In this document: positions 28,456 through 60,772 of the stretch, piece by piece
How the letters are laid out: every line of letters starts with the position of its first letter
How positions within the stretch are numbered: position 1 is the stretch's first letter
Sequence record: NC_041878.1
Direction: 5' to 3' (one strand)
Length of the DNA stretch: 64,000 bases
The notes under the pieces: model-generated
What the model saw: only the letters and a program-made list of their open reading frames with translations
Databases searched by the model: none
What the model was told of the DNA's origin: nothing
Program-made: the position numbers and the translations under genes

Positions 28456-28521
28456 CGTCATACACAGCACAAGCTGTATCGAAGAAATTCTGAGGCCAGT
28501 CAGCCAAGAAACAGAATGACA
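28456..28521 (+). ncRNA. ACAGCA-helix family RNA, variant closing helix
   Basis: GTCAT-ACACAGCA...AGA-ATGAC. Confidence 0.4.
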
Positions 28522-28547
28522 TAAGAAAAGTACTTCGGTGCTTTTAT

Positions 28548-28671
28548 CGGGAATTGGTGTAATGGCAGCACAACGTTATAACATAGATTCTTGTATATAG
28601 GAATTTCACAGCAACCAATACAATTGCATAGGGAGCCGTGAGATGAGGTTCGATTCCTTGATTCCCGACTA
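28548..28671 (+). ncRNA. tRNA-Pro-like (AGG loop) with 50-nt ACAGCAA insert in anticodon stem
   Basis: Acceptor CGGGAAT/ATTCCCG-A, D arm, T arm GGTTCGATTCC; insert 28576-28625. Confidence 0.6.
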
Positions 28672-28679
28672 ATTAACTA

Positions 28680-28702
28680 AACCAGCTTTATGCTGGTTTT
28701 TT
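28680..28702 (+). terminator. intrinsic terminator
   Basis: AAACCAGC-tttat-GCTGGTTTTTT. Confidence 0.75.
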
Positions 28703-28720
28703 CATTTCTGAGGTCATACC

Positions 28721-28870
28721 ATGAAGATATTAAAAGTACACAAAAGTATCGGATATTCAATTTTGCCGTTTAAGCAGAATCCTACTTATGGTCGTTGCTC
28801 CACTTGCGGAAGATATGATAATGATGGTGGTCCATTATGTGGTAATGTATTTTGCCCAGGAGGGAACTGA
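28721..28870 (+). CDS. small Cys-rich hypothetical protein (49 aa)
   Basis: SD GAGG; CSTC...CGNVFC. Confidence 0.55.
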   Translation: MKILKVHKSIGYSILPFKQNPTYGRCSTCGRYDNDGGPLCGNVFCPGGN

Positions 28871-29124
28871 TGAATCCTAATGATTTAAACAATTCTGAAA
28901 ATTTTACATGGTGTTATACTTGGTCAGACCTTCGTGAGAATTATGATAAAGTAAAACTAGTTAATCCAGAATTCATTGAACTGTATGGATTTGCTATTCC
29001 AGATGATGTGAAAGTTGGTGATGTTTTTGCAGTCACAGAACTTACTGAAGATGGTGGAACTCGTGTTGACCGTGGATTTGTTATTCCACGTCAATATCTT
29101 GATTACTTTGAGGCTAATTGCTGA
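28870..29124 (+). CDS. hypothetical protein
   Basis: Start moved to MNPND. Confidence 0.7.
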   Translation: MNPNDLNNSENFTWCYTWSDLRENYDKVKLVNPEFIELYGFAIPDDVKVGDVFAVTELTEDGGTRVDRGFVIPRQYLDYFEANC

Positions 29125-29915
29125 TGCACTTTTTGATAATGGATAAGTACTTTAACGAAGATGGATTTCGTATCATGAAAGAATACATGGTACAGAATAA
29201 TATTCCTCATACTTCAGTTAAGCCTGTGCCATTTATTAACATATTCGTACCAGAAGACGTTAATGATTATTCTGATTCTACATATGAAAAGTACTTCGAC
29301 AAAAGCATTCCTACTATGTCATTTGGTAGTTATGCATTAGCTCATCAGCTAATTGAAGCCGGTTATACACCTGGTGGATATATTAATGATAATCATAATA
29401 TTGAAATACAGATGCGTGAATGGGGTTCTGAGAATTTCTTAAATGGTAATTGTATCTTCACTACTATGGGTGAAATTGAGAATCCTGGTTGGGATAATAT
29501 TTTCATTCGCCCTGTACATGATACTAAAGTTATGGTTGCTCGTGTAATGGAACAACGTAATTTTAATGCTGAAGTTGATGCATTCTTTTCATTCTACGGT
29601 GATCCAGAATTTGAAGTACTATTAGCAGAAGCACAAGAAATACTGGCAGAATATCGGTTATTCATTGTTAACGGTAAAGTTGTATCACATTCTTTATATA
29701 AAGTTCGTGGAACATTTTGTATCAATCCTGAAGTGCCAAAAGAAATTATTGATATTGCAGAAGAACTCTGTACTAAATGGGTTCCAGCCGATGCATTTGT
29801 TATGGATTTTGCGGAAACAGATAACGGCTTTAAAGTACTGGAAGTTAATAACATAAATTGTGCTGGATTTTATGCAGCCAACATACCAGCAATAGTTGAG
29901 GCATTCCGTGCGTAA
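29124..29915 (+). CDS. ATP-grasp domain protein (paralog of 21298-22125)
   Basis: IFIRPVHDTK, EYRLFIVNGKV, MDFAETDNGFKVLEVNNINCAGFY. Confidence 0.8.
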   Translation: MHFLIMDKYFNEDGFRIMKEYMVQNNIPHTSVKPVPFINIFVPEDVNDYSDSTYEKYFDKSIPTMSFGSYALAHQLIEAGYTPGGYINDNHNIEIQMREWGSENFLNGNCIFTTMGEIENPGWDNIFIRPVHDTKVMVARVMEQRNFNAEVDAFFSFYGDPEFEVLLAEAQEILAEYRLFIVNGKVVSHSLYKVRGTFCINPEVPKEIIDIAEELCTKWVPADAFVMDFAETDNGFKVLEVNNINCAGFYAANIPAIVEAFRA

Positions 29916-30285
29916 TCATCTTAAAGAATTTCTTGAAAAACATAATACAGTTGCGTATGAATTACAAACTGATGTTAGAAAAAGTATTGAAGATTTAGAG
30001 TTCGTTTATATAAAACTTACGTGTGTATATAATGATTATATGACTCTGCACTATTATACAGATAGTGATAATTTACAAATATGGGATGAGATTGATAAAT
30101 CGGTATACATATATAATGACTTTTCAAAGTTATCTGATGAAGCATACCATTTCCAACAAATGACAGTACTAGACCATATCGGATTTGAACATGATGAAGT
30201 GCAGCCGATGATGGATATTATAAACCGGATTAAAAGAAAACATGAAACCAAATCTACCAAAAGAACCAGATCCAAGACTAATTGA
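29908..30285 (+). CDS. hypothetical protein, EExxFQxxT family
   Basis: DEAYHFQQMTVLD. Confidence 0.65.
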   Translation: MRNHLKEFLEKHNTVAYELQTDVRKSIEDLEFVYIKLTCVYNDYMTLHYYTDSDNLQIWDEIDKSVYIYNDFSKLSDEAYHFQQMTVLDHIGFEHDEVQPMMDIINRIKRKHETKSTKRTRSKTN

Positions 30286-30703
30286 AAGTATGTGTCTACG
30301 TTATGACCATTCTCATGCTATGCGTGTACCACGCTTTAAGAATGGGTCATTTGAAATTGAAACAGAAGAAGAATTTGAACGCCGTAGAGATGCAAATCGT
30401 CGTGTAATGCGTCAATTGTATGAAGAAGTATCCGGTAACGGTTTCTATCAATATCCAAATCCAAAGGACAAAATGAATAAATCTATTTGCTTAACTCTAC
30501 CTGAAGGTGATCAGTCCGACCTTGAAATTGCAGTTTCTCGTTTTATTGAAAGCCTTAATATTGGTTCTGAAGAACCGTGGGGTGAATGCTATGTACTGCA
30601 AGGTAATATCTTACATGGTGTTCAATGGTCATTAACTGAAGATGGTGATTGTGAAATTGGGTGCTCATGGCACGAAAATGATAATTACTCTGGAGAAGCA
30701 TGA
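30242..30703 (+). CDS. hypothetical protein
   Basis: Co-oriented ORF. Confidence 0.7.
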   Translation: MKPNLPKEPDPRLIESMCLRYDHSHAMRVPRFKNGSFEIETEEEFERRRDANRRVMRQLYEEVSGNGFYQYPNPKDKMNKSICLTLPEGDQSDLEIAVSRFIESLNIGSEEPWGECYVLQGNILHGVQWSLTEDGDCEIGCSWHENDNYSGEA

Positions 30704-30972
30704 TGAGTACTAAAGTAACATTTAAAGTCACTGATGAAGATATGGAATATGCACGTTCTATTTGGGATAGTGCTGATTATGTACTTTCTGAAGTGAACCG
30801 TATATTAGCTGAACGTGGTATTGATATTAAATTTGATGTTGATAACTGCCATGATGATGAATATCTTGAAGAGTACTGGAATGAAGAACATCCAGATTAT
30901 AATCGGGGTATTGTCATTGTAGAAACACCTAACGATGATGAATGCGACTTCATGGACAAATTGATTAAATGA
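30700..30972 (+). CDS. hypothetical protein
   Basis: Co-oriented ORF. Confidence 0.7.
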   Translation: MMSTKVTFKVTDEDMEYARSIWDSADYVLSEVNRILAERGIDIKFDVDNCHDDEYLEEYWNEEHPDYNRGIVIVETPNDDECDFMDKLIK

Positions 30973-32302: not shown

Positions 32303-32308
32303 AATAAA

Positions 32309-32337: not shown

Positions 32338-32356
32338 ATAGATAAATAAGACAAAC

Positions 32357-32442: not shown

Positions 32443-32488
32443 ATTAAAGTTTTTATTTTGGAGTCTTATAACACGTCTTAAATCTTTT

Positions 32489-41994: not shown

Positions 41995-42068
41995 GCCTTT
42001 GTAGCTCAGCGGTAGAGCGGGGATCTCTAAAATCCTTTGTCGTGGGTTCGAATCCCTCCATCGGCACA
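41995..42068 (+). tRNA. tRNA with CTA anticodon (amber suppressor candidate), Phe-like body
   Basis: GGGAT-CTCTAAA-ATCCT; canonical D arm; 2 acceptor and 1 T-stem mismatches. Confidence 0.7.
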
Positions 42069-42371: not shown

Positions 42372-42483
42372 GCATAAATGACGGAATTGGTAAACGTAGA
42401 GTCTGACAATAGCGAAAGCGACGATAGGACTTCGGGAGTAGCCGTGAGGTTCCCTTGTAGGTTCGAATCCTGCTTTATGCACC
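42372..42483 (+). ncRNA. class II tRNA-like RNA with anticodon loop replaced by ~22-nt insert
   Basis: GCATAAA/TTTATGC acceptor, D and T arms intact; GC-GAAA-GC in place of anticodon. Confidence 0.6.
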
Positions 42484-47722: not shown

Positions 47723-47836
47723 GCAGTGATCGTCTAGCGGCCCAGGACACGAAAAGCGATTCTTGATTAAGAATCTTACGGCATCTATAACTTTCATTTC
47801 ACGAACGTAACGTAGGTTCGAATCCTACTCACTGCT
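47723..47836 (+). tRNA. tRNA-Glu(TTC) with 41-nt insert between nt 28 and 29
   Basis: Glu-type D arm GTCTAGCGGCCCAGGAC; CG[insert 47752-47792]TTC-ATTTCAC-GAACG. Confidence 0.65.
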
Positions 47837-49423: not shown

Positions 49424-49548
49424 GGCGAGTTAGCTCAGTGGTAGAGCACGTATGAAACCCAGGATTCCTGTACTTGAATCCCGCAGCAACTATACTCTCA
49501 AGCCTTTTAAGCTCGTGGTCATTGGTTCGAATCCAATACTCGCCACCA
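49424..49548 (+). tRNA. tRNA-Lys(TTT) with 50-nt insert between nt 28 and 29
   Basis: Removing 49451-49500 leaves a 75-nt cloverleaf: CGAGC-CTTTTAA-GCTCG, ACCA. Confidence 0.75.
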
Positions 49549-52995: not shown

Positions 52996-53466
52996 ATGGG
53001 TACAATTATACTGTACTGTGTTTTGGGAAGTCTAGGTTTATTCATTCTGTACATGTTGGTGATCACTTCATCTTTGGGTACTGAACGTTTTAAAGTACCG
53101 CAATTCTTAATGTCATCTTTGACGTACAGCGAAGAAGCAACAACTAAGTTGAATCTTCTGATTGATAAGTACGAAGCTGGTCTTCTGAACATTCGCCGTA
53201 CTGATAAAACATTAATTTTTACTGATGTTGAAACTGGTCAAAAAGCTGGTGAAATCTGGATTCAGAACAAGTACTATTCGTATGGTAATCTGCATCGTTA
53301 CGGTGCACAAGATGACAAACAATGGTCTTGTAATAAACCAAACATCAAAACGTTCAAGCGTATTATCAAACTTGAACAAACTCTAGAAAAAACTTCTCAA
53401 GAGCAATCTGCGGTTAGTACTCCTAAACCAGCAGCTAAAGCTGGTGAAGAAGTTGTTCTAGACTAA
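52996..53466 (+). CDS. membrane-anchored hypothetical protein
   Basis: SD GGAG; N-terminal TM. Confidence 0.75.
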   Translation: MGTIILYCVLGSLGLFILYMLVITSSLGTERFKVPQFLMSSLTYSEEATTKLNLLIDKYEAGLLNIRRTDKTLIFTDVETGQKAGEIWIQNKYYSYGNLHRYGAQDDKQWSCNKPNIKTFKRIIKLEQTLEKTSQEQSAVSTPKPAAKAGEEVVLD

Positions 53467-53484
53467 GGGCGAAAGCCCTTTTTT
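53466..53484 (+). terminator. intrinsic terminator
   Basis: AGGGC-gaaa-GCCCT TTTTT. Confidence 0.8.
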
Positions 53485-53520
53485 AATTGAGATGTTTTTC
53501 AGTACTTTATGAAAAATAAA

Positions 53521-53549
53521 TGAAACGATAGAAATTTTTGTGGTATAAT
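53521..53549 (+). promoter_or_regulatory. class-B promoter
   Basis: TGAAAC-17-TATAAT before permuted tRNA mimic. Confidence 0.8.
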
Positions 53550-53566
53550 ATAGTACATAAGGCAAC

Positions 53567-53687
53567 GGAATCTTACAGCAAAAATAATTAATTTTTGATG
53601 AAAACAAAACGATGGCGGTTCGAATCCCCACCCACGATTTTGCCTTATTTTAAGTGGGAGCATGGTGCTGGATAAACAAGAGATTCC
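53567..53687 (+). ncRNA. circularly permuted tRNA mimic (ACAGCAA family)
   Basis: GGAATC-TTACAGCAA, T arm, CCCAC/GTGGG closed acceptor, D-like hairpin, GATTCC. Confidence 0.7.
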
Positions 53688-53709
53688 AGATTTTAATTTA
53701 GAAAATTTT

Positions 53710-53738
53710 TGAAACGAATCAAAAATTTGTGGTATAAT
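53710..53738 (+). promoter_or_regulatory. class-B promoter
   Basis: TGAAAC-17-TATAAT. Confidence 0.8.
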
Positions 53739-53755
53739 AAACGTATTAGCAACAC

Positions 53756-53873
53756 GAAATCTTACAGCAAACAATATCTTATATTTTTTATGCGAAAAAA
53801 ACGATGTGGTTCGAATCCACAACAACCATGTTGCTATGTTGGTTGTGCATGGGGCTAGAAAACAAAAGATTTC
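53756..53873 (+). ncRNA. circularly permuted tRNA mimic (ACAGCAA family)
   Basis: GAAATCTT-ACAGCAA; TGTGG-TTCGAAT-CCACA; ACAACC/GGTTGT; AAGATTTC. Confidence 0.75.
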
Positions 53874-53907
53874 AGTTTTTTTAATTAAGACAAATAGGAC
53901 AACGGCA

Positions 53908-54054
53908 ATGACCGCAGAAGAAAATTTAGAAATCCTTCGTAAAATTCTTGACGGAATTCGTGATGGCGATTTGAATGAAGTAATGTCCGAAATAGGTTTT
54001 GAAGTATCCAAAAGTACAGATAAAAGTACTGAATGGATAAACAAAAACCAATAA
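53908..54054 (+). CDS. small hypothetical protein
   Basis: SD AGGA; MTAEENLEIL. Confidence 0.6.
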   Translation: MTAEENLEILRKILDGIRDGDLNEVMSEIGFEVSKSTDKSTEWINKNQ

Positions 54055-54060
54055 CAATCA

Positions 54061-54133
54061 GTTCCCATCGTCTAGTGGTAGGACTTTTGACTTTCTATCA
54101 AAAAACCTCGGTTCGAATCCGGGTGGGAACGCA
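54061..54133 (+). tRNA. tRNA-Glu(TTC)
   Basis: TTTGA-CTTTCTA-TCAAA, T arm. Confidence 0.9.
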
Positions 54134-54142
54134 AAGATATTT

Positions 54143-54231
54143 GGGGGAATAGTCCGTAGTTGGTAGCGGGGCAGACTGTAAATCTGCTACACGAAAGTGT
54201 TCGGGTGGTTCGACTCCATCTTCCCTCACCA
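54143..54231 (+). tRNA. tRNA-Tyr(GTA)
   Basis: GCAGA-CTGTAAA-TCTGC, long variable arm, CCA. Confidence 0.95.
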
Positions 54232-54232
54232 A

Positions 54233-54338
54233 AAGAATCGCACAGCAAACATCAATCTTATATATTTCATTTGGCGAAAACACCTTCGGTTCGATTCCGA
54301 TTTACCACTGGATGTGGGGATAGAAAAACACGATTCTT
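54233..54338 (+). ncRNA. ACAGCAA family RNA with T arm and short closed acceptor
   Basis: AAGAATCG-CACAGCAA...TCGG-TTCGATT-CCGA...CGATTCTT. Confidence 0.65.
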
Positions 54339-54376
54339 GTTTCTAATTTAGCGTGAGTTAACAGAATTTAGCACAC

Positions 54377-54533
54377 GGATTCAGACAGCAAACATAAAAT
54401 CTTAAAAATCATATCATATAACGAGATTGTCTACTCGGACGTAAAACTCCCTTCGTAGTCACTTGGCAACTAGGGATATATAAATTAGTTGTATCGAACA
54501 GTGCTAAGGTTTTTGTTCGATTACATTGAATCC
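54377..54533 (+). ncRNA. ACAGCAA family RNA with inverted closing helix
   Basis: GGATTCA-GACAGCAA...TGAATCC. Confidence 0.55.
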
Positions 54534-54563
54534 AGTAATCAAAGTACTTCATTGTACTTTTAT

Positions 54564-54654
54564 GGAAGATTGGCAGAGCGGTTTAATGCACATGTCTTGA
54601 AAACATGCGGGGGTTAATAGCCCTCCCTGGGTTCGAATCCCAGGTCTTCCACCA
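54564..54654 (+). tRNA. tRNA-Ser(TGA)
   Basis: CATGT-CTTGAAA-ACATG, long variable arm, CCA. Confidence 0.95.
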
Positions 54655-54660
54655 AATTTT

Positions 54661-54781
54661 GGGAAAGTAGCTCAGTTGGTAGAGCACGTATAGACGATTC
54701 TTGTAGTTGAATCTTACAGCAACCATACAATTGCATATATGAAAGCACGGTGTCATTGGTTCGAATCCAGTCTTTCCCACA
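54661..54781 (+). ncRNA. tRNA (Phe-like body) with 43-nt ACAGCAA insert and 10-nt loop
   Basis: GGGAAAG/CTTTCCC, canonical D and T arms; CG[54689-54731]TGC-ATATATGAAA-GCACG. Confidence 0.65.
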
Positions 54782-54845
54782 TAGAATCTAACAGCAAACC
54801 TTATTTTATCAAACCTAACCTTTGAAGCGAAAATAATAGATTCTA
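54782..54845 (+). ncRNA. minimal ACAGCAA family RNA
   Basis: TAGAATCTA-ACAGCAA...TAGATTCTA. Confidence 0.6.
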
Positions 54846-54870
54846 GTACTTTTAATTTGAGAAATACATA

Positions 54871-55272
54871 TTGGAAAATGATGAAATTGAAAATATGTTA
54901 GTTGACGCATTGCGAAAAATCGACACTTCATCATATGATTTTAAATCTTCCAAAGAGATTTCGAATTCAGAATTCGGTTCTGACGGCAAACGGCGATACT
55001 TGAAACTCTACTTTCAAAAAAGTTCAGGTGAAGGTATTATAGAATTCATTTATCATTCGATAAAAGATACGCTACGATTCAGAATTCAATATATTGATAA
55101 CTCTGATGAAGATGAAGATTTTGATGGAACTAGCATATCGTATAAGATACCAAGAACTGAGGAACAATATTTTCAGTACGATACAATTCAGGACAACATG
55201 TTTAGTTTAGAATTCTATATTTTACTAGAAAAAACAATGTCAGAATTGACACTACTATGGTATAGTAGATGA
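54871..55272 (+). CDS. hypothetical protein, EExxFQxxT family
   Basis: TEEQYFQYDTIQD. Confidence 0.7.
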   Translation: MENDEIENMLVDALRKIDTSSYDFKSSKEISNSEFGSDGKRRYLKLYFQKSSGEGIIEFIYHSIKDTLRFRIQYIDNSDEDEDFDGTSISYKIPRTEEQYFQYDTIQDNMFSLEFYILLEKTMSELTLLWYSR

Positions 55273-55295
55273 TTTAATCACCACAAGGAAATGAA

Positions 55296-55505
55296 ATGTT
55301 TTACGATTATTATTATAAAGTAGATGGTGCACTTCGTCGTCATACTTCTGCGGAAGAACTAAATGATGAACAAGTAAGCAACATCTTCGGTGCACAAAAA
55401 CGTGTAGTACTTCTTGAGCCAGTAGTGTTTGAACGCGAAGTTCAGGAAGATGAAAAAACTAAAACTGTTAAAGAACATGTAGGGTTTATCGGTTACGTAG
55501 AATAA
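55296..55505 (+). CDS. hypothetical protein
   Basis: SD AAGGA. Confidence 0.7.
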   Translation: MFYDYYYKVDGALRRHTSAEELNDEQVSNIFGAQKRVVLLEPVVFEREVQEDEKTKTVKEHVGFIGYVE

Positions 55506-55532
55506 TAAATGTAACGTACTGATAAATAAAAT

Positions 55533-55577
55533 AGAATCCATCCAGCATTGACCGGAAAATAATATATTGGATTCTTG
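55533..55577 (+). ncRNA. minimal ACAGCAA family variant
   Basis: AGAATCCA-TCCAGCA...TGGATTCT-TG. Confidence 0.45.
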
Positions 55578-55600
55578 TATTAATTGAGATGAGATATATT

Positions 55601-55825
55601 ATGGATAATCAACACAAACAAATTAAAGGATACCGAGATTTATCTCAGAAAGAGATTAATCAAATGAATGCATTAAAAGATATTGCTAATAAAGTTGGCG
55701 ATATTATTGAAGCACTACAAGATGACCCTGACGTTGATCAACGATGGCTTGCAATTGCGAAGACTGACCTTCAAAAAGGTTTCATGTCAGCAGTTCGAAG
55801 CGTTGCTAAACCGGACTCGTTTTAA
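55601..55825 (+). CDS. acb2: anti-CBASS cyclic-nucleotide sponge, Acb2 family
   Basis: MDNQHKQIKGYRDLSQKEI..MN...RWLAIAKTDLQKGFM...AKPDSF matches Acb2/Vs.4 as recalled. Confidence 0.85.
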   Translation: MDNQHKQIKGYRDLSQKEINQMNALKDIANKVGDIIEALQDDPDVDQRWLAIAKTDLQKGFMSAVRSVAKPDSF

Positions 55826-56223
55826 TGGACAAATATGATCGTTTAGATTCAATAGGTGAAGAACACCTGTTGAGCTTGATGAAAGTACAAAATCCAAGAA
55901 CAATGATAGGATTATCTGACCAGATAGTGTTTAATGAAAATGATTCATTCTCACTTATTACTGGAGAGGTAATCCTTTTTCATTTGGATGATGGTAGTAA
56001 CACATTTAGTGTAATGATACTACCAAACAATACATTCAAAGTACTGTACTATGTAACAGATGATGAAGATGATGGTAACTACATATTCACTTTCAACAAT
56101 GTTCCATATGATATTACTGAAGAATGGCATTTTCAAAAGAGTACACAAAAACGTTTACCATTCACTTATGAATTTCATGAGAAGATGAAAGAATTCGTTG
56201 AGTACTGTTTGAAGTTAATTTAA
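55825..56223 (+). CDS. hypothetical protein, EExxFQxxT family
   Basis: TEEWHFQKSTQK. Confidence 0.7.
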   Translation: MDKYDRLDSIGEEHLLSLMKVQNPRTMIGLSDQIVFNENDSFSLITGEVILFHLDDGSNTFSVMILPNNTFKVLYYVTDDEDDGNYIFTFNNVPYDITEEWHFQKSTQKRLPFTYEFHEKMKEFVEYCLKLI

Positions 56224-56226
56224 CCT

Positions 56227-56300
56227 AGCGGGTTAGTATAGAGGCATTACACTCGACTGATAATCGAGCGAAGGCGGATCGTTACCGCCACCCGCTACCA
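56227..56300 (+). tRNA. tRNA-Ile(GAT), atypical T loop
   Basis: CTCGA-CTGATAA-TCGAG; GGCGG-ATCGTTA-CCGCC; CCA. Confidence 0.9.
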
Positions 56301-56310
56301 ACGAATTTTC

Positions 56311-56448
56311 GGAATCTAACAGCAATTAAAAATGTTAACTAAAAAATAGCTGCCGCAAGGCTTGTAGGTTCAAGTCCTACAAATTATGTCTTCATGAATA
56401 ATGATGGTGAAAATGGTAAACACGGCTATTAACTAAACAATGGATTCC
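56311..56448 (+). ncRNA. circularly permuted class II (Leu-like) tRNA mimic, ACAGCAA family
   Basis: GGAATC-TAACAGCAA; ATAGC; CC-GCAA-GG variable arm; TGTAGG-TTCAAGT-CCTACA; D arm GGTGAAAATGGTAAACAC; GCTAT; GGATTCC. Confidence 0.8.
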
Positions 56449-56464
56449 TGTATTAATTAAACCA

Positions 56465-56560
56465 CAAGAGCATACGTACATTGATTCAATAATCTATAGG
56501 CTTTGTACGATGGGTGGCAGATGGATTATCATCTGAAGATAGTTACGCTGCGGCTATCAA
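56465..56560 (+). ncRNA. candidate three-hairpin RNA
   Basis: CGTACA/TGTACG, CAGATG/CATCTG, GATAG/CTATC hairpins in tandem. Confidence 0.3.
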
Positions 56561-56567
56561 CAAAATT

Positions 56568-56712
56568 TGGAATTTGCCAGCAATTAACTTATTCAACGCT
56601 GCGGGTCGCAGGTTCGAGTCCTGCCAGATATGAAATGATGCTTCGTAAGATAAATCAGATTAGTACTGTAGCTCAGTTGGGAGAGCAGCAGCCCACACAA
56701 AGATGAATTCCA
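56568..56712 (+). ncRNA. circularly permuted tRNA mimic, ACAGCAA family
   Basis: TGGAATT-TGCCAGCAA; GCTGC; GCAGG-TTCGAGT-CCTGC; CAG/CTG; TAGCTCAGTTGGGAGAGC; GCAGC; GAATTCCA. Confidence 0.85.
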
Positions 56713-56725
56713 GTATTAATTAAGT

Positions 56726-56902
56726 AGGGCGGTTGTAACCAGTACTAGAATAATACTTAGGAGAGTAGTGACTCAATAGTACTAGTAGCTTTTCAGAAAT
56801 GAGAGCTTTCACGAGGCCAGCACAGTTAAGATCACAACTTAATTGTACACGTAGAGTTGGCAAAAAACGGATAAGTAGTCATTCACTGGTTAGGGTGGCC
56901 TT
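56726..56902 (+). ncRNA. candidate nested multi-helix RNA
   Basis: TAACCAGT/ACTGGTTA, GTGACT/AGTCAT, GCCAGC/GTTGGC, ACAGTTAAG/CTTAATTGT. Confidence 0.5.
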
Positions 56903-56959
56903 ATAAACTATTAATTGAGACATAAATATTCCTATACGTTTTTTAGTAAGGATATAATT

Positions 56960-57559
56960 ATGGAAATGAAAAAACTAATGGAAGATATTTCTGCCATTAT
57001 GGAAGGACAATTACCTGACTATTACTATCATGGTAGTTCTTCACCAATCACAAATTTCAGTGATGAGTTTGTTGGTAGAGGTAATGATGAATACGGTCCT
57101 GGTATATATTTTAGCTCCGTTCCTAGTACTGCAATTGGTTATGCCAAAGATGGTGCAAATGGTGTAGTATATCAGTGTCAGATAACTTTAAGAAAAGTAC
57201 TCTCAAAGAAACAAAAAATCAATAAAGCAGTACTTTTAAAGTTAATGCAAGCAACACCAGATGATGAAGCATATACTAATTGGGATGAAAACCCCAATAG
57301 AGCATATCAAAATGCATTGAATTCATATATTGATGCAGAAACTAATATGTATGATGCTTTGATGGATGTATGGTACGATTGGTATCGTTATCATGGTACT
57401 GAATTTGTACGTAATCTTGTTAAATTAGGTTATGATGGTTATATCTACGAATTTCCAAATGGAGAAAGATTTGTAGTAGTATATAATCCAGCAAGTATTA
57501 AAGTTGTAAATAGTTATTCTCCAGAAGAAGCTCTACAAACACTAGTTAAATCTAAATAA
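56960..57559 (+). CDS. ADP-ribosyltransferase-fold protein (ART-PolyVal-like)
   Basis: YHGS....F...GPGIYFS....AIGYA...LGYDGYI...VVYNP..IK. Confidence 0.6.
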   Translation: MEMKKLMEDISAIMEGQLPDYYYHGSSSPITNFSDEFVGRGNDEYGPGIYFSSVPSTAIGYAKDGANGVVYQCQITLRKVLSKKQKINKAVLLKLMQATPDDEAYTNWDENPNRAYQNALNSYIDAETNMYDALMDVWYDWYRYHGTEFVRNLVKLGYDGYIYEFPNGERFVVVYNPASIKVVNSYSPEEALQTLVKSK

Positions 57560-57593
57560 TTATAGTACTAACTATATTAGAAGGATTTTTAAA

Positions 57594-57947
57594 GTGTTTA
57601 AGACTAGATTAAAAGTTGAATTAATCAACAACGAAGGAAAGAAGTGGAAACTTATTGAAGATTTAGTTTACGAAGATGAAATGCATGGAAGAATTACTGT
57701 TCCTGCTGGATTTGAAACTGACTTTGCAAGTGTACCTAGAATACCAGTTGTGTTTGAATTGGTAGGGGATCGTGGTCATGCAGCAGCAACACTTCACGAT
57801 TGGTTGTATCATAATGATAATCTATCACGTAAAGAAGTTGATAAGATTCTACTTCAGGCTTTAAGAGATACGAATGTGGGTAAAGTTCGTTCATATTTGA
57901 TGTACTTTGGTGTACGTGGATTTGGATGGTTATTCTACATGAAATAA
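57594..57947 (+). CDS. DUF1353 family protein
   Basis: ITVPAGFETDFASVPR...AATLHDWLY. Confidence 0.85.
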   Translation: MFKTRLKVELINNEGKKWKLIEDLVYEDEMHGRITVPAGFETDFASVPRIPVVFELVGDRGHAAATLHDWLYHNDNLSRKEVDKILLQALRDTNVGKVRSYLMYFGVRGFGWLFYMK

Positions 57948-57952
57948 GAATT

Positions 57953-58210
57953 TGGAATTTAACAGCACAAAACATTTTGTCGCAGGTTCGAATCCTGCCA
58001 GAAATATTTAATTTGTAGATTACTTTATTATCATTTTCTAGATATTGATAATATTGAACATGTAACACCGTGGAGGTAACAGCTTTAGCGGGTTGTGAGA
58101 TAAACGCAGGGGTTACAATATATGTTGCAACGACCGATATGGCTAATCATAACAAATTAACTTAGTTCTGTAGCTTAGCTGGTAGAGCAAATGATAACGA
58201 ATAAATTCCA
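57953..58210 (+). ncRNA. circularly permuted tRNA mimic with 162-nt acceptor-stem insert
   Basis: TGGAATTT-AACAGCA; CATTT; GCAGG-TTCGAAT-CCTGC; CAGAA..TTCTG; TAGCTTAGCTGGTAGAGC; AAATG; AAATTCCA. Confidence 0.8.
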
Positions 58211-58245
58211 GTATTAATTAAACTAAAAAAAAAAGGTGCAATACA

Positions 58246-58680
58246 GTGGAACACGCTTTTAAAATTAACATCGGAGATTATTCTGATGATGGTCATGGTA
58301 AAAACGAAGTTATTATTGTTAAAAGTACTAAATCAGTACAAGATGTACTTAATGCGTTCATCAGTGCTGGTACTAAATTGAATGTAGTTCAACATGGTAG
58401 ATTTGTAATTGCTGAAGAATATGAAGATTCAAAGCTAAGTAATGAACATGCTGACTTCCTTCGTAATGCAGGTATCGAATTCGAAGATCTAGTTTATAAC
58501 GATGGTGACGAAGAAGAACCTGAATACATGATTAACGGCACTAATGAAATCATCCATTTAGTAATGCGTATTGCACAAACAGAATTAGACTTCGATTATC
58601 AAATTGCGAATGATACAATTCCATCATTCAATGGTTTTAGTGGAGCGGGTCCACAAATCGGATACGGTCTATTCTGGTAA
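58246..58680 (+). CDS. conserved phage hypothetical protein
   Basis: IGDYSDDGHGK...IGYGLF. Confidence 0.8.
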   Translation: MEHAFKINIGDYSDDGHGKNEVIIVKSTKSVQDVLNAFISAGTKLNVVQHGRFVIAEEYEDSKLSNEHADFLRNAGIEFEDLVYNDGDEEEPEYMINGTNEIIHLVMRIAQTELDFDYQIANDTIPSFNGFSGAGPQIGYGLFW

Positions 58681-58687
58681 TAAAATT

Positions 58688-58753
58688 TGGAATCTAGCAG
58701 CAACCATAAAATGAAATCAACTGTTAATTGAAAACCTCAAAAAATGGATTCCA
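58688..58753 (+). ncRNA. minimal ACAGCAA family RNA carrying Asn-type anticodon hairpin
   Basis: TGGAATC-TAGCAGCAA...TCAA-CTGTTAA-TTGA...GGATTCCA. Confidence 0.65.
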
Positions 58754-58760
58754 GCCTTTT

Positions 58761-59072
58761 ATGAATATAAAAGAAATTGTAGAACAAATTGAAAGTACTA
58801 TGAAAACTTCAGGTGATAATTACATGAAGGAGTTAATACTAACAAATAGGAAGAAATTACGTAACACATTCTGTGATGAATGTAATTCTTACTCCGTGTT
58901 CATGATAGTACATGATGAATTATGGAACATCATAAGTGACGGTAACTTAGATATTTTCTTATGTCCTAAATGTATGGAAAATCGATTAGGTAGAAAAATA
59001 GAAATTGCTGATTTAAAAATTTGTAATGTAAATTACCCTTACTTTTTAGCATTACAAATGATTGAAAAATAA
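58761..59072 (+). CDS. hypothetical protein with CxxC motifs
   Basis: CDEC...LCPKCMENRLGR. Confidence 0.65.
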   Translation: MNIKEIVEQIESTMKTSGDNYMKELILTNRKKLRNTFCDECNSYSVFMIVHDELWNIISDGNLDIFLCPKCMENRLGRKIEIADLKICNVNYPYFLALQMIEK

Positions 59073-59073
59073 A

Positions 59074-59102
59074 TGAAACGCCACAAGAAATTGTGGTATA
59101 AT
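59074..59102 (+). promoter_or_regulatory. class-B promoter
   Basis: TGAAAC-17-TATAAT before tRNA-Asn. Confidence 0.8.
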
Positions 59103-59122
59103 ATAAGTAAGAAAAACAACTT

Positions 59123-59196
59123 GACTGTATAGCTCAGAGGCAGAGCGGCTCCCTGTTAAGGAGAAGGTCGGGATTTCGAAATTCCCTACGGTCGCA
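59123..59196 (+). tRNA. tRNA-Asn(GTT)
   Basis: CTCC-CTGTTAA-GGAG; acceptor GACTGTA/TACGGTC. Confidence 0.9.
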
Positions 59197-59320
59197 AAGA
59201 ATCAAATTCACCAGGCGTACTATGGTGCAATACGGATAGCATGTTATTCTATAAGATTGGAATAGAATACGTATTAGAACCTTGTAAAGTTCTTCTGTAA
59301 ACTCAATTTGATACCTTCTT

Positions 59321-59387
59321 TAGAATCTAACAGCAAACACATTTAAACATATATTTTTGGGATATAAAACGTTAAAAACGGATTCTA
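59321..59387 (+). ncRNA. minimal ACAGCAA family RNA
   Basis: TAGAATC-TAACAGCAA...TATAT-TTTTGGG-ATATA...GATTCTA. Confidence 0.6.
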
Positions 59388-59417
59388 GTCTTATTAAAAG
59401 CAATCGAGAATATTTAC

Positions 59418-59648
59418 ATGAAAACGATCAAAATGTATTTGCTACAACGTCCAGGCCGCGATGATGATTATATCTCAGTACTAGATGATAAAATCAACGT
59501 TCAGTCAAGTCTATTAAAACATATGTGGAATGACCCAAGTAAGATCAATTTCAAAATTCTGACATTCCCTTATACATTAGAAACCTATTATGGTGATTCT
59601 AATGTTCTGGAAGATGCAGTACTATTATGGGAACATAATATAGATTAA
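59418..59648 (+). CDS. hypothetical protein
   Basis: Co-oriented ORF. Confidence 0.65.
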   Translation: MKTIKMYLLQRPGRDDDYISVLDDKINVQSSLLKHMWNDPSKINFKILTFPYTLETYYGDSNVLEDAVLLWEHNID

Positions 59649-59653
59649 AAATT

Positions 59654-59709
59654 TAGAATCTAACAGCAATTAAAACTCATTTGGATAATATGAAAACCGA
59701 TAGATTCTA
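59654..59709 (+). ncRNA. minimal ACAGCAA family RNA (near-identical to 60718-60772)
   Basis: TAGAATCTAACAGCAATTAAAACTCATTTGGATAATATGAAAA...TAGATTCTA. Confidence 0.65.
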
Positions 59710-59715
59710 GTCTTT

Positions 59716-59790
59716 AGGCGTATAGTGTAATTGGTTAGCACACCAGGTTTTGATCCTGGTAATCGAGGTTCAAGTCCTTGTATGCCTGCA
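59716..59790 (+). tRNA. tRNA-Gln(TTG)
   Basis: CCAGG-TTTTGAT-CCTGG; CGAGG-TTCAAGT-CCTTG. Confidence 0.9.
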
Positions 59791-59809
59791 AAATAAAATA
59801 AGGCAAATT

Positions 59810-60058
59810 ATGTTCGAACAAGAATACAGCAATTCAACTCCAGTACAAGATATGCTTGCATATTTTGTAACCGGTACAGTACGAATTAGCGATTATATGG
59901 TTGAAGAACCAAGAAGATATAATAAGTCACACATTGTTTATGCTCTTGATGAAAATGACGCAGAACGTAAGTTCATAGAACATTATGAAAAGAAAACTTC
60001 AGAGTATGAACGTTACTACAGTGTAAGTAATGTAGAAGTTTCAGAAACCTTAATTTAA
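59810..60058 (+). CDS. hypothetical protein
   Basis: Start moved past tRNA to MFEQE. Confidence 0.7.
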   Translation: MFEQEYSNSTPVQDMLAYFVTGTVRISDYMVEEPRRYNKSHIVYALDENDAERKFIEHYEKKTSEYERYYSVSNVEVSETLI

Positions 60059-60194
60059 AAAATTTCATTTCCTTGTGAAACAAGCTCGCATGATTCCCCT
60101 AGCTTGTAAAATTGTATGATGGGAACCGCGTTGCACCTGTACAGGTCAGATTGTAAAGATCAAGTATGTACAGTACTGAGAGCGGCAGTACACT

Positions 60195-60269
60195 GCATCC
60201 ATCGTATATCGGCTATTATAATTGGCTTCCACCCAATAGAACGGAGTTCGACCCTCCGTGGATGCTCGA
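60195..60269 (+). tRNA. tRNA-Gly(TCC)
   Basis: ATTGG-CTTCCAC-CCAAT; U73. Confidence 0.9.
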
Positions 60270-60383
60270 AGATTAACAAACAATAAGGTAAATTATATGC
60301 TATAGAATCCTAGTACTGGTCCTCCTGATAAGTTTAATTCAGAACAAACTACTAAATTAAACAATATCAAAAAGGAACATATT

Positions 60384-60710
60384 ATGTTAAACAAAGAACA
60401 ATACATTACTGTAAAAGCAACCTGGAAAAAAGTAAAAGAGCACACTGTACACGAACACATTATCTATAATGTACTTCGGGGTAAAGAGGCTGATGAAGGG
60501 TTTGTAGCTTTAACTGATTGGGGTCGTTTGAATGCAAGTGATAACAATCCGTGGTTCAACTATGATAACGCAGTACGCGAAATTCACTATCAGTTGAATG
60601 CTAAACGTTATAACTATGAAGGTACAGTAAAACATTATTCCGATGTTTTCGGCATTGATTTAACACCTGAACTAATTGCAGAAGTACTACAAGCAATTAA
60701 GTTCAAGTAA
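60384..60710 (+). CDS. conserved phage hypothetical protein
   Basis: SD AAGGA; HIIYNVLRGK. Confidence 0.75.
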   Translation: MLNKEQYITVKATWKKVKEHTVHEHIIYNVLRGKEADEGFVALTDWGRLNASDNNPWFNYDNAVREIHYQLNAKRYNYEGTVKHYSDVFGIDLTPELIAEVLQAIKFK

Positions 60711-60717
60711 CAGAATT

Positions 60718-60772
60718 TAGAATCTAACAGCAATTAAACTCATTTGGATAATATGAAAAACAATAGATTCTA
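60718..60772 (+). ncRNA. minimal ACAGCAA family RNA
   Basis: Direct repeat of 59654-59709. Confidence 0.65.

What the first reader, a model, noticed from the sequence alone, without database searches (positions are those of the whole stretch)
28456..60772. Dispersed family of at least 17 tRNA-hybrid RNAs sharing a GAATC-NN-ACAGCAA / GATTC module, in normal and circularly permuted arrangements
Seen: the same module (a 5-8 bp GAATC/GATTC helix followed by an unpaired (A/G)CAGCAA) occurs in three architectures. (A) As an insert in the 5' anticodon-stem strand of normal-order tRNAs: 28548, 47723, 49424, 54661. (B) As the closing helix of permuted tRNAs read anticodon-3' > T arm > closed acceptor > D arm > anticodon-5': 53567, 53756, 54233, 56311, 56568, 57953. 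(C) As minimal or variant hairpins: 28456, 54377, 54782, 55533, 58688, 59321, 59654, 60718. A and B are circular permutations of one fold, opened either at the acceptor end or in the module's linker. The helix covaries between copies while CAGCA is conserved, which suggests a protein-binding site. Established: bacterial YrlA Y RNAs are permuted tRNA mimics with a closed acceptor stem and a Ro60-binding terminal helix. Inference: this is a phage Y-RNA-like or new RNP family that tethers tRNA or anticodon mimics to one protein, possibly as decoys or repair scaffolds against anticodon nucleases. The motif does not match the canonical Ro60 site as I recall it, and no Ro60/TROVE gene is visible in this window.
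Basis: partly seen in the sequence, partly recalled or inferred. Interest (0 to 1): 0.95.

Follow-up and report, generated by a model that had tools for sequence, protein, structure and literature searches.

The report
Shared RNA handle on phage tRNA mimics
A giant plant-pathogen phage (and several unrelated huge phages) encode about sixteen small RNAs per genome in which one constant "handle" (a short helix next to the unpaired letters ACAGCAA) is joined to whole tRNAs, rearranged tRNA look-alikes or bare anticodon hairpins; this RNA family matches no Rfam family and no paper I could find, and probably serves the phage-host fight over tRNAs.

Summary
The window is Pectobacterium phage vB_PcaM_CBB, bases 248001-312000. 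GAATCNNRCAGCAA occurs 13 times, all on the + strand, against 0.62 expected. 16 of the 17 listed elements share one module; 28456 is a different conserved hairpin.

The module is a 7-10 bp helix (core GAWUC in CBB) followed by unpaired ACAGCAA opposite an A-rich strand. The helix covaries in all 9 pairs across 70 copies.

It occurs in three topologies:
- A: a hairpin inserted between positions 28 and 29 of real tRNAs (Lys, Glu; Asp, Tyr in other phages).
- B: the closing helix of circularly permuted tRNA look-alikes. One matches the tRNA-like core of Rfam YrlA at 31 bits, below the cut-off of 69.
- C: the closing helix of anticodon-stem-loop mimics (Lys CUUUUAA, Asn CUGUUAA).

The family is conserved in GAP32, Serratia BF and Yersinia, Erwinia, Xanthomonas and Salmonella relatives. 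It also occurs in metagenomic tRNA arrays that share no protein with CBB. It was not found in cellular genomes or Rfam.

It is not a Ro60/YrlA member: no GNCGAA motif and no TROVE gene.

Best reading, inferred: a Y-RNA-like ribonucleoprotein handle presenting tRNA or anticodon decoys or repair scaffolds. The partner and the expression of the RNAs are unknown.

The parts
28548..28668 (+). Class A: tRNA with handle hairpin. Y GATTC 28586-28590, X GAATT 28601-28605, ACAGCAA 28608-28614. The split anticodon stem is ACG+GC / GC+CGT, with an unusual loop AUAGGGA.
   Evidence: Sequence. The whole element, loop included, is nearly invariant in CBB, GAP32, BF, XbC2, Kaldavass and Yen9-04. It is annotated tRNA-Val(AAC) or tRNA-Pseudo.
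47723..47836 (+). Class A: tRNA-Glu(UUC)-like. The handle hairpin is inserted after C27-G28. Y GATTCTT 47758-64, X AAGAATC 47769-75, variant motif ACGGCAU 47778-84. The anticodon hairpin is TTC-ATTTCAC-GAA, closed by CG.
   Evidence: Sequence. Orthologues in GAP32 and BF carry the same variant. Annotated tRNA-OTHER.
49424..49545 (+). Class A: tRNA-Lys(UUU) with a 50-nt insert between positions 28 and 29. Y GGATTC 49462-67, X GAATCC 49476-81, GCAGCAA 49483-89. The anticodon hairpin is AGC-CTTTTAA-GCT.
   Evidence: Rfam tRNA scores 50.2 bits, with 63 nt where the model has 13 between pairs 27-28 and 42-43. Orthologues exist in GAP32, BF, L123, L124 and L125. They show compensatory changes in both halves of the split stem and in the handle.
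53551..53687 (+). Class B RNA with its own promoter (53520-53549). From 5' to 3' it holds: a leader, X GGAATCT at 53567, ACAGCAA, the anticodon-like hairpin UUUUG-AUGAAAA-CAAAA, a T arm, a closed acceptor, and Y AGATTCC at 53681-87. Leader AUAAGGCAA pairs with UUGCCUUAU, which lies just 3' of the acceptor 3' strand (a pseudoknot).
   Evidence: The ninth leader pair is A-U, U-A or G-C in different phages.
53740..53873 (+). Class B RNA with its own promoter (53709-53738). X GAAATCT at 53756, Y AGATTTC at 53867-73. It has a perfect T arm and a 7-bp acceptor ACAACCA/UGGUUGU. Leader UAGCAACA pairs with the closing loop UGUUGCUA.
54233..54338 (+). Class B, directly after tRNA-Tyr. It runs from AAGAATC to GATTCTT and holds the hairpin UUUC-AUUUGGC-GAAA (UUG-type loop), a T arm and a short closed acceptor.
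   Evidence: Orthologues are in GAP32, BF, L123, L124, L090 and L055.
54377..54533 (+). Long class C element. Its helix has the central pair flipped (GGATTC ... GAATCC), and the motif is ACAGCAA.
   Evidence: Orthologues in L123 and L124 have ACUGCAA instead.
54661..54779 (+). Class A tRNA. Y GATTC 54696-700, X GAATC 54709-13, ACAGCAA 54716-22. In CBB the anticodon loop is an aberrant 10 nt.
   Evidence: Rfam tRNA scores 47.6 bits. Orthologues in GAP32, L087 and L055 are tRNA-Lys (CCA-CUUUUAA-UGG) with a different handle helix, AAUUAC/GUAAUU, and the same CAGCAAC.
54782..54845 (+). Class C: handle, then the second helix UUAUUUU/AAAAUAA, then the hairpin UCAAA-CCUAACC-UUUGA.
   Evidence: In GAP32, BF, L123, L124, L125 and L087 the loop is CUUUUAA or CUUUUAC (Lys type), and the second helix covaries (CCAUAA/UUAUGG against CCACAA/UUGUGG).
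55533..55575 (+). Minimal class C element (43 nt), upstream of the gp526 start codon. The motif is CCAGCAU.
   Evidence: There is a GAP32 orthologue.
56309..56450 (+). Class B: permuted type-II tRNA look-alike. From 5' to 3' it holds the anticodon-stem analogue AUAGC/GCUAU, an extra arm, a T arm, a closed acceptor and a D arm.
   Evidence: RNAalifold on 6 orthologues gives 31 pairs, 12 of them with compensatory changes.
56567..56713 (+). Class B: permuted type-I tRNA look-alike. It holds a T arm, a CAG/CUG acceptor with a 38-nt insert, the D arm GCUCAGUUGGGAGAGC and the stem GCUGC/GCAGC.
   Evidence: YrlA model positions 23-85 align at 31.4 bits. The GAP32 and BF orthologues close a 7-bp acceptor with a UUCG or AUCG tetraloop.
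57952..58211 (+). Class B paralogue of 56567 with an insert of about 150 nt in the acceptor-closing loop.
58687..58754 (+). Class C: handle plus the hairpin UCAA-CUGUUAA-UUGA, which carries the tRNA-Asn anticodon loop.
   Evidence: The same loop occurs in 7 orthologues or paralogues.
59320..59388 (+). Class C: handle plus the hairpin UAUAU-UUUUGGG-AUAUA (UUG-type loop).
59653..59710 (+). Class C. It ends 5 nt before the 5' end of tRNA-Gln (59716).
60717..60773 (+). Class C, a near-copy of 59653, upstream of gp517.

Best explanation
These are phage-encoded small RNAs built from two modules.

**The constant module (the 'handle').** It is a 7-10 bp helix. The strand that leads into the rest of the RNA continues as unpaired ACAGCAA, facing an A-rich strand.

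**The variable module (the 'head').** It is derived from tRNA. It can be a complete tRNA with the handle branching from the anticodon stem between positions 28 and 29. It can be a permuted tRNA body with a closed acceptor stem. Or it can be only an anticodon stem-loop.

**What I think it does.** I think the handle is a docking site for one RNA-binding factor, encoded either by the phage or by a universal host gene. The heads would present tRNA parts to enzymes that act on tRNA. This would work like a bacterial Y RNA (YrlA), with a protein-binding stem plus a tRNA mimic, but with a different handle and no Ro60. The most likely use is in the conflict over tRNAs early in infection. The RNAs could be decoys for anticodon nucleases or tRNA-modifying enzymes, or scaffolds for the phage's RNA-repair enzymes (Rnl1, a second ligase, an RlaP-type nucleotidyltransferase, a Thg1-like enzyme).

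**Shown:** the sequence family, the helices, the tRNA-like folds, the anticodon-loop mimicry, the strand bias, and conservation across unrelated phages.

**Inferred:** transcription into discrete RNAs, protein binding, and a decoy or repair role.
For: - **Enrichment and strand.** The motif is about 20-fold enriched and found only on the transcribed strand. A relaxed scan gives 28 hits on + against 9 on -.
- **Handle helix.** 93.8% of 630 cells are paired, against 74.4% in shuffles. All 9 pairs show changes on both sides. The covariation score is 0.527 against 0.190, reached by 0 of 500 shuffles, and it collapses when the partner is slid. Pair 9-29 was not used to pick the copies, and it shows UA 27, CG 13, UG 11, GC 6, AU 4. 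G-U pairs (16, plus 35 U-G at the end pair) outnumber A-C (9), as expected for an RNA read from the + strand.
- **Class A.** The Rfam tRNA model aligns around the insert. The split stem covaries: CG/CG becomes GG/CC, and AGC/GCU becomes ACA/UGU or CCA/UGG. The same insertion site is used in Lys, Glu, Asp and Tyr tRNAs in unrelated phages.
- **Class B.** There is a partial YrlA match, 12 compensatory pairs, and a leader-trailer pseudoknot with A-U, U-A and G-C at one pair.
- **Class C.** Canonical 7-nt loops occur: CUGUUAA 7 times and CUUUUAA/C 7 times.
- **Transcription signals.** Two members have strong extended -10 promoters.
- **Distribution.** The handle is the only thing shared with tRNA arrays of phage contigs that have no protein in common with the CBB window. 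A strict pattern gives only chance-level hits in 185,579 cellular genomes.
- **Repair genes.** CBB encodes RNA-repair enzymes elsewhere in its genome.
Against: - No partner protein is identified, and there are no expression data.
- The heads cover many specificities (Lys, Asn, Glu, UUG-, GAA-, GCN- and GAU-type loops). Two conserved heads have non-canonical loops (28548 AUAGGGA; 54661 has 10 nt in CBB). A simple 'decoy for one nuclease' picture therefore does not fit.
- The three YrlA-like class B RNAs (56311, 56568, 57953) have no anticodon loop at all.
- The elements fill almost every intergenic gap between 53.5 and 60.8 kb and abut tRNA ends. This fits a processing or insulating role equally well.
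- Hosts as different as enterobacteria and (judging by weak Lak-phage similarity) gut Bacteroidota would need a common partner.
- The helix core pairs were required when I collected copies, so part of the pairing statistic is circular.
Confidence: 0.4

Rival explanations
1. The handle is a processing signal, in effect punctuation or a splice site. An endoribonuclease recognises it. Class A elements are then tRNA genes with an intron at a non-canonical site. Class B elements are permuted genes matured by cutting and end-joining with the phage ligases. Class C elements are structured spacers that define mRNA and tRNA ends in the long early transcripts.
For: - The elements occupy nearly every intergenic gap between 53.5 and 60.8 kb. 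They start 1-10 nt after a tRNA 3' end or a stop codon, and end about 5 nt before a tRNA 5' end or shortly before a start codon.
- Removing the insert from 49424 or 47723 would leave a perfect tRNA-Lys or tRNA-Glu.
- The helix brings the 5' and 3' ends of class B and C elements together. The class A hairpin looks like their joined form.
- CBB has two RNA ligases.
- Permuted two-piece tmRNA genes sit in the same arrays in L132 and L218.
Against: - No bulge-helix-bulge motif forms at the junctions when the sequence is read, and I found no splicing endonuclease annotated.
- Joining the flanks of class B RNAs does not give a conserved anticodon loop. The result would be CUUAAAA in BF, CUAUAAA in GAP32 and CCACACA in CBB.
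- Normal copies of the Glu and Lys tRNAs exist as well.
- A mere spacer would not need the conserved anticodon-loop mimics that class C carries.
Confidence: 0.2
2. The handle itself is the active part. It would be a multi-copy sponge for a host or phage RNA-binding protein, or a small-molecule aptamer. The tRNA-derived parts would serve only as stable, RNase P/Z-processed scaffolds, as in engineered 'tRNA scaffold' RNAs.
For: - There are 16 copies per genome, with the constant part conserved far more than the heads.
- The handle is inserted in the anticodon stem, exactly where engineered tRNA scaffolds carry their cargo (own knowledge).
- The A-rich strand often reads as A-R-N triplets.
Against: - The heads are under their own constraint. 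Anticodon loops are conserved, and the second helix and split stems show compensatory changes.
- No known protein site or Rfam aptamer matches.
Confidence: 0.15
3. This is selfish or decaying DNA. The elements are either small elements with terminal inverted repeats (MITE-like) or debris of duplicated tRNA genes, with no function as RNA.
For: - The helix arms read as 8-10 bp terminal inverted repeats around short variable interiors.
- tRNA arrays of large phages are in flux.
- The CBB copy 54661 has a degraded anticodon loop compared with its orthologues.
Against: - All copies lie in one orientation.
- Orthologous positions are kept across genera.
- The arms change in compensatory fashion, with G-U tolerated more than A-C.
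- Copies within one genome have unrelated interiors, so they are not recent transpositions.
- The hairpin form sits inside tRNAs at one fixed site, in phages that share no proteins.
Confidence: 0.07
4. This is a true Ro60 (Rsr)/Y RNA system. The RNAs would be divergent YrlA that bind a Ro60 orthologue encoded by the phage or the host.
For: The best class B RNA aligns to the tRNA-like core of YrlA. Some jumbo phages do carry TROVE proteins (PMC7824862).
Against: - The score is 31 bits against a gathering score of 69, and only model positions 23-85 align. The Ro-binding ends do not.
- The motif GNCGAAN0-1G (PMC4201824) is absent.
- The CBB annotation tables have no TROVE hit.
- Most members have no YrlA-like body.
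Confidence: 0.03
5. The module is a small self-cleaving ribozyme occurring in permuted forms, as hammerhead and twister ribozymes do.
For: It shows natural circular permutation, lies next to tRNAs, and has a conserved unpaired core.
Against: No Rfam ribozyme matches even at E up to 5. The conserved core is only about 7 nt plus an A-rich strand, with no second conserved junction.
Confidence: 0.05

Closest known systems
Bacterial Y RNA YrlA (Rfam RF02553; Chen et al. 2014, PMC4201824)
   Same: Both are two-module small RNAs. The 5' and 3' ends form a stem with a conserved protein-site-like motif. The body is a permuted tRNA mimic with a T arm, a closed acceptor-like stem and a D arm. Both occur in phages among tRNA genes. 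The YrlA model aligns to the core of 56568.
   Different: - The handle sequence differs (helix plus ACAGCAA, not GNCGAA).
- There is no Ro60/TROVE gene.
- The match is below the Rfam threshold.
- The same handle is also joined to bare anticodon hairpins and inserted into complete tRNAs.
- There are up to 16 copies per genome instead of one or two.
Circularly permuted tRNA genes (Cyanidioschyzon merolae type) and two-piece (permuted) tmRNA genes
   Same: The 3' half (T arm, acceptor 3' strand) lies upstream of the 5' half (acceptor 5' strand, D arm), with an intervening loop at the acceptor end. Permuted tmRNA genes sit in the same arrays in L132 and L218.
   Different: There is no bulge-helix-bulge junction. 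Rejoining gives no conserved anticodon loop. The opening lies in an added hairpin at positions 28/29 rather than inside the tRNA.
tRNA introns at non-canonical positions (archaeal) and group I introns in bacterial or phage tRNAs
   Same: An insert of about 45-50 nt interrupts an otherwise canonical tRNA. tRNAscan-SE calls some copies intron-containing or pseudo.
   Different: The insert lies in the 5' strand of the anticodon stem, between positions 28 and 29. It is far too small for group I, lacks a bulge-helix-bulge motif, and shares its motif with non-tRNA elements.
Anticodon-arm mimics in regulation (the thrS operator) and phage tRNAs that counter tRNA-targeting defences
   Same: Hairpins reproduce the full 7-nt anticodon loop of a particular tRNA. 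They sit in a phage tRNA island that is expressed early.
   Different: Here the mimics are free-standing units closed by a shared handle. No link to a synthetase gene or to a named nuclease has been shown.
RNase III processing hairpins between phage T7 early genes
   Same: A structured element with a lower helix, an internal loop and an upper hairpin lies in most intergenic gaps of an early region.
   Different: The lower helix is only 7-10 bp. The internal loop carries an invariant sequence. The same element occurs inside tRNAs.

Membership tests
YrlA / bacterial Y RNA (RF02553) | Reaches the Rfam gathering score (69 bits) over the full model | tested here: not met
   The best match is 31.4 bits, over model positions 23-85 of 114, at 56600-56690. 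A second match scores 18.6 bits. No other member matches.
YrlA / bacterial Y RNA (RF02553) | tRNA-like body in the order T arm, closed acceptor-like stem, D arm, enclosed by a stem | tested here: met
   This holds for 56311, 56568 and 57953 and their orthologues (cmscan alignment; RNAalifold with compensatory pairs). It does not hold for class A or class C.
YrlA / bacterial Y RNA (RF02553) | Rsr/Ro60-binding motif GNCGAAN0-1G near the 5' end (PMC4201824) | tested here: not met
   The 5' strands read (U/A)(U/A)RGAAUCNNACAGCAA in 70 aligned copies.
YrlA / bacterial Y RNA (RF02553) | Encoded next to, or together with, a Ro60/TROVE gene | tested here: not met
   The longest ORF in positions 27000-64000 is 286 aa. 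The CBB authors' Pfam/HHpred/InterPro table has 0 TROVE hits. I did not run my own profile search of all 554 ORFs.
tRNA (RF00005) | Cloverleaf scoring above the gathering score | tested here: met
   49424 scores 50.2 bits and 54661 scores 47.6 bits. 28548 and 47723 were not reported at gathering, and ARAGORN calls none of the four.
tRNA (RF00005) | Continuous 5-bp anticodon stem with a 7-nt loop (17-nt arm) | tested here: not met
   63 nt lie where the model has 13 between pairs 27-28 and 42-43. The stem is split by the handle.
Permuted tRNA genes (C. merolae type) | 3' half upstream of the 5' half, with the ends forming a bulge-helix-bulge motif; joining restores a canonical tRNA | tested here: not met
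   The permuted order is present. No bulge-helix-bulge motif is present. The joined flanks give non-conserved, partly non-canonical loops in orthologues.
Group I intron in tRNA | Intron of at least about 200 nt with a P3-P9 core, placed in the anticodon loop | tested here: not met
   The insert is 45-50 nt and lies in the stem. There is no Rfam intron match.
MITE-like mobile element | Terminal inverted repeats, both orientations, target-site duplication, near-identical copies | tested here: not met
   Inverted arms are present. However, all copies are on one strand, the interiors are unrelated, and the positions are orthologous across genera.
Known self-cleaving ribozymes and riboswitches (Rfam 15) | Match to a curated covariance model | tested here: not met
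   There is no match at gathering over the window, and none at E up to 5 over 53400-61000.

The most novel reading that the evidence does not exclude
Handle-tagged tRNA and anticodon-loop mimics are a widespread RNA-based counter-defence (or tRNA-repair) system of huge phages that has not been recognised before. One conserved factor would dock on the ACAGCAA handle. It would use the heads to trap, sense or repair the damage done by host anticodon nucleases. The same handle, inserted at positions 28/29, would mark a special class of non-translating tRNAs.
Probability: 0.25. Interest if true: 0.9.

Novelty: new variant of a known kind. Interest (0 to 1): 0.85.

Why it matters
**Scale.** This would be a large structured-RNA family: about 16 genes per genome, in at least six phage lineages with no shared proteins in these regions. 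Annotation has missed it. The elements are currently labelled as odd, pseudo or mis-typed tRNAs, as spurious ORFs, or as nothing.

**New architectures.** I know of no precedent for a complete tRNA carrying a conserved structured branch in the 5' strand of its anticodon stem. I also know of none for free-standing anticodon-loop mimics closed by the same module.

**Testable questions.**
- It gives a concrete handle for asking what phage tRNA islands do beyond matching codon usage.
- It extends the Y-RNA idea (a tRNA mimic tethered to a protein site) to systems without Ro60.
- It may point to substrates for phage RNA ligases and RlaP/Thg1-type repair enzymes, whose natural targets are poorly known.

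**Practical value.** It offers a search motif for annotating huge-phage genomes.

Tried and rejected
- **Rfam.** Scans at gathering and at E up to 5 gave only tRNA and a sub-threshold YrlA core match.
- **Literature.** Searches on permuted tRNA and phage, the CBB paper, YrlA and phage, tRNA-like and jumbo phage, tRNA intron and phage, and ribozyme with tRNA maturation found no description of this element. The library lacks most subscription journals.
- **'YWGUA' as a separate motif, resembling U33-G34-U35-A36 of queuosine tRNAs.** Rejected. It is mostly the outer three helix pairs plus a conserved G.
- **Second helix GUAU/AUAC in class A.** Not conserved in BF, L123 or L124.
- **Pairing of ACAGC with GCUGU after the D arm, as RNAalifold proposed.** Rejected. 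The internal AUAGC/GCUAU to ACAGC/GCUGU change covaries instead.
- **28456 as a member.** Rejected.
- **Exact-pattern scans of IMG/VR.** These are dominated by chance hits and had to be filtered by context.
- **Lak-B2 megaphage region similar to L157.** No handles there, so I do not claim Lak phages proper.
- **T4 stable RNAs C and D.** No clear handle.
- **Shared neighbouring protein across lineages.** None found.
- **GANTC methylation-site idea, boxA/nut, CsrA, MazF (ACA), ToxI and Cas6 repeat resemblances.** Considered from memory only and dropped, for lack of a consistent match.

Full report
**Source.** The window is identical to Pectobacterium phage vB_PcaM_CBB (KU574722/NC_041878), record positions 248001-312000. 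This is a 378-kb myovirus of the RaK2/GAP32 group. The region is the early tRNA island. ARAGORN finds 21 tRNAs and Rfam finds 23, all on the + strand among short + strand ORFs.

**Observation.** GAATCNNRCAGCAA with up to 1 mismatch occurs 13 times, all on the + strand. The expectation is 0.62, and the largest count in 100 shuffles was 3.
- Reading the sequence confirms the listed elements at their coordinates.
- A relaxed search asked for any helix of at least 7 bp next to NCRGCA with an A-rich opposite strand, or a hairpin form. It gives 28 candidates on + and 9 on -. The excess is exactly the known members, and no further convincing copy appears.
- One listed element, 28456, is not a member. 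In six phages its conserved features are an ACAGC-ANAA-GCUGU hairpin and a second hairpin. The proposed GTCAT/ATGAC helix is lost in GAP32 and BF.
- The window therefore holds 16 members.

**The handle.** I collected copies from CBB, GAP32, Serratia BF, Yersinia fHe-Yen9-04 and metagenomic contigs. I aligned the two sides of 70 distinct class B/C copies.
It has three outer pairs, a 5-bp core (GAAUC/GAUUC in most), and one or two inner pairs formed by the 'NN'.
- 93.8% of 630 cells are paired, against 74.4% after shuffling. All nine pairs show changes on both sides. The covariation score is 0.527 against 0.190, reached by 0 of 500 shuffles. Sliding the partner by one column drops pairing to 46-52%.
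- Part of this is circular, because I required the core and two of the three outer pairs when collecting copies. Pair 9-29 was not used for collection, and it shows UA 27, CG 13, UG 11, GC 6, AU 4.
- Other lineages replace the core by GGUUC/GAACC, AGAAC/GUUCU, AAUAC/GUAUU or GAAAC/GUUUC. One GAP32 tRNA uses AAUUAC/GUAAUU. In every case ACAGCAA is kept.
- G-U pairs (16, plus 35 U-G at the terminal pair) outnumber A-C (9). All copies lie on the transcribed strand. Both points argue for an RNA helix rather than a DNA repeat.
- After the helix come an A-A opposition, then CAGCAA facing a run of A, and a near-invariant G three bases past the core on the 3' strand.

**Class A.** The Rfam tRNA model aligns 49424 end to end. 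It places 63 nt where 13 are expected between pairs 27-28 and 42-43.
- The arm reads as C27-G28, then the insert, then AGC-CUUUUAA-GCU, then C42-G43. This is a tRNA-Lys(UUU) whose anticodon stem is split in its 5' strand.
- 47723 is the same for Glu (CG, insert, UUC-AUUUCAC-GAA, CG).
- Orthologues keep the arrangement with compensatory changes. CG/CG becomes GG/CC in L124. AGC/GCU becomes ACA/UGU in BF. The central handle pair is T-A in CBB, T-T in L123 and L125, and A-T in L124.
- 54661 has a 10-nt loop in CBB, but its orthologues are tRNA-Lys.
- 28548 has the loop AUAGGGA, invariant in six phages.
- In unrelated contigs the same insertion site carries the handle in an Asp(GUC) tRNA (L165) and a UUG-type tRNA (L132, L218). 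In BF it carries a Tyr(GUA)-type tRNA.
- Here the handle is a plain hairpin, often with a GNRA-like tetraloop (GUGA, GAAA).
- Normal Glu and Lys tRNAs are present as well.

**Class B.** For 56568 the YrlA model matches positions 23-85, the tRNA-like core, at 31.4 bits.
- The GAP32 and BF orthologues have a clean T arm, a 7-bp acceptor closed by a UUCG or AUCG tetraloop, the D arm GCUCAGUUGGUAGAGC, and a 5-bp anticodon-stem analogue that runs into the handle.
- 56311 is the equivalent for a type-II tRNA with an extra arm. RNAalifold on six orthologues gives 31 pairs, 12 with compensatory changes.
- 53567 and 53756 have strong TG-extended -10 promoters, an anticodon-like hairpin (UUUUG-AUGAAAA-CAAAA; AUGCGAA), a T arm and a closed acceptor.
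Eight to ten nucleotides of the 5' leader of these two RNAs pair with the sequence immediately 3' of the acceptor 3' strand. At one pair the partners are A-U, U-A or G-C in different phages.

**Class C.** The interiors are a second helix plus a hairpin whose loop copies a tRNA anticodon loop.
- UCAA-CUGUUAA-UUGA (Asn) occurs in seven copies.
- UCAAA-CUUUUAA/C-UUUGA (Lys) occurs in seven copies, with the second helix covarying (CCAUAA/UUAUGG against CCACAA/UUGUGG).
- UUG-type loops also occur.
- In random 60-nt windows 18% contain some hairpin of this kind. The argument therefore rests on conservation of specific loops, not on their mere presence.

**Context.** Between 53.5 and 60.8 kb almost every intergenic gap holds one element. 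They begin 1-10 nt after a tRNA 3' end or a stop codon. They end about 5 nt before a tRNA 5' end, or shortly before a start codon.

**Distribution.**
- Among cultured phages one class C element is found only in the roughly 350-kb relatives: Cronobacter, Serratia, Erwinia, Yersinia, Klebsiella fENko-Kae01, Salmonella 7t3/Munch and Xanthomonas XbC2. It is never annotated.
- Filtered IMG/VR hits add contigs with dense tRNA arrays on the same strand as the handles: L132/L165/L218, L157/L009, L211, L112 and L177.
- These contigs share no detectable protein with the CBB window. One is only faintly similar to Lak megaphages, and the matching Lak-B2 region has no handles.
- A strict pattern finds 9 hits in 185,579 cellular genomes. 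None has tRNA neighbours, an A-rich strand or a second copy, so this is chance level.

**Comparison with known families.**
- Nothing in Rfam 15 matches apart from tRNA and the sub-threshold YrlA core.
- YrlA is defined by its Ro60 site (GNCGAAN0-1G) and its linkage to a TROVE gene (PMC4201824). Both are absent here.
- The elements are also not permuted tRNA genes in the red-alga sense, not group I or bulge-helix-bulge introns, and not MITEs (see the membership table).
- I found no paper describing them. The CBB paper counts 33 tRNAs, 31 of them 'functional', without comment.

**Mechanism.**
- Established: a constant, sequence-specific structured module is fused in three topologies to tRNA-derived parts, under purifying selection, in phage tRNA arrays only.
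- Inferred: an invariant unpaired heptamer beside a covarying helix is the usual signature of a protein site. The heads are what tRNA-binding enzymes recognise.
- The closest working analogy is a Y RNA. I therefore favour a ribonucleoprotein that presents tRNA or anticodon mimics, as decoys or repair scaffolds, in the tRNA conflict (0.4).
- The main rival is a processing or splice-like signal (0.2). It explains the intergenic placement and the 'joined' look of class A. It does not explain the conserved anticodon mimics or the lack of a restorable anticodon in class B.
- A sponge or aptamer role for the handle alone (0.15), selfish DNA (0.07), a ribozyme (0.05) and a true Ro60 system (0.03) follow.
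- No expression or binding data exist. All functional statements are hypotheses.

Noticed in passing
window 28456-28545: A separate conserved non-coding element lies upstream of the class A tRNA 28548. It has an ACAGC-ANAA-GCUGU hairpin, a CUGAGGC...GUCAGCC hairpin with an invariant AAGAAACAGAAUGAC tail, and then a covarying GNRA/UUCG-capped hairpin just before the tRNA. It is conserved in six phages.
   Followed up: partly
window 42372-42481: A 110-nt tRNA-like gene (Rfam tRNA 37.3 bits; annotated tRNA-Val GAC) has a different insert in the anticodon region and a long GGGA...UCCC extra arm. It has no handle.
   Followed up: no
window 41995-42067: A tRNA with anticodon CUA (amber-suppressor type; ARAGORN calls it Pyl) is conserved as 'Sup-tRNA' in GAP32 and BF.
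   Followed up: no
window 53499-53822 (- strand) and the four class A tRNAs: The RefSeq CDS gp530 lies antisense over two promoter-driven class B RNAs and is probably spurious. The class A tRNAs are annotated as tRNA-Val(AAC), tRNA-OTHER, tRNA-Phe(GAA) and tRNA-Ser(AGA). These labels do not fit the anticodon loops read here.
   Followed up: partly
L184 1239-1460 (IMG/VR contig of 1,021,348 bp, 25% G+C): Five copies of CATACAGCAAU (three in tandem 20-nt repeats) and two handle-like helices (GAAUCAU...AUGAUUC-UAG; GAAUC...GAUUC-UUG) lie within 220 nt. The contig's size and composition suggest a giant virus of amoebae. No tRNA is nearby. It may be chance or a distant relative of the handle.
   Followed up: partly
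L132 2976-3383 and L218 1994-2362: Circularly permuted (two-piece) tmRNA genes lie inside the same phage tRNA arrays that carry handles.
   Followed up: no
window 53520-53549, 53709-53738, 59073-59102: Three near-consensus promoters have the phage-specific -35 TGAAA(CG) and a TG-extended TATAAT. Two drive class B RNAs and one drives tRNA-Asn. A strong terminator at 53465-53480 precedes them.
   Followed up: partly
L247 (phage T4 70908-71171, rnaC and rnaD): The two T4 stable RNAs of unknown function, which lie next to its tRNA cluster, have no clear handle. rnaD has a 5-bp hairpin followed by CAGCAG, and rnaC ends in a T arm.
   Followed up: partly
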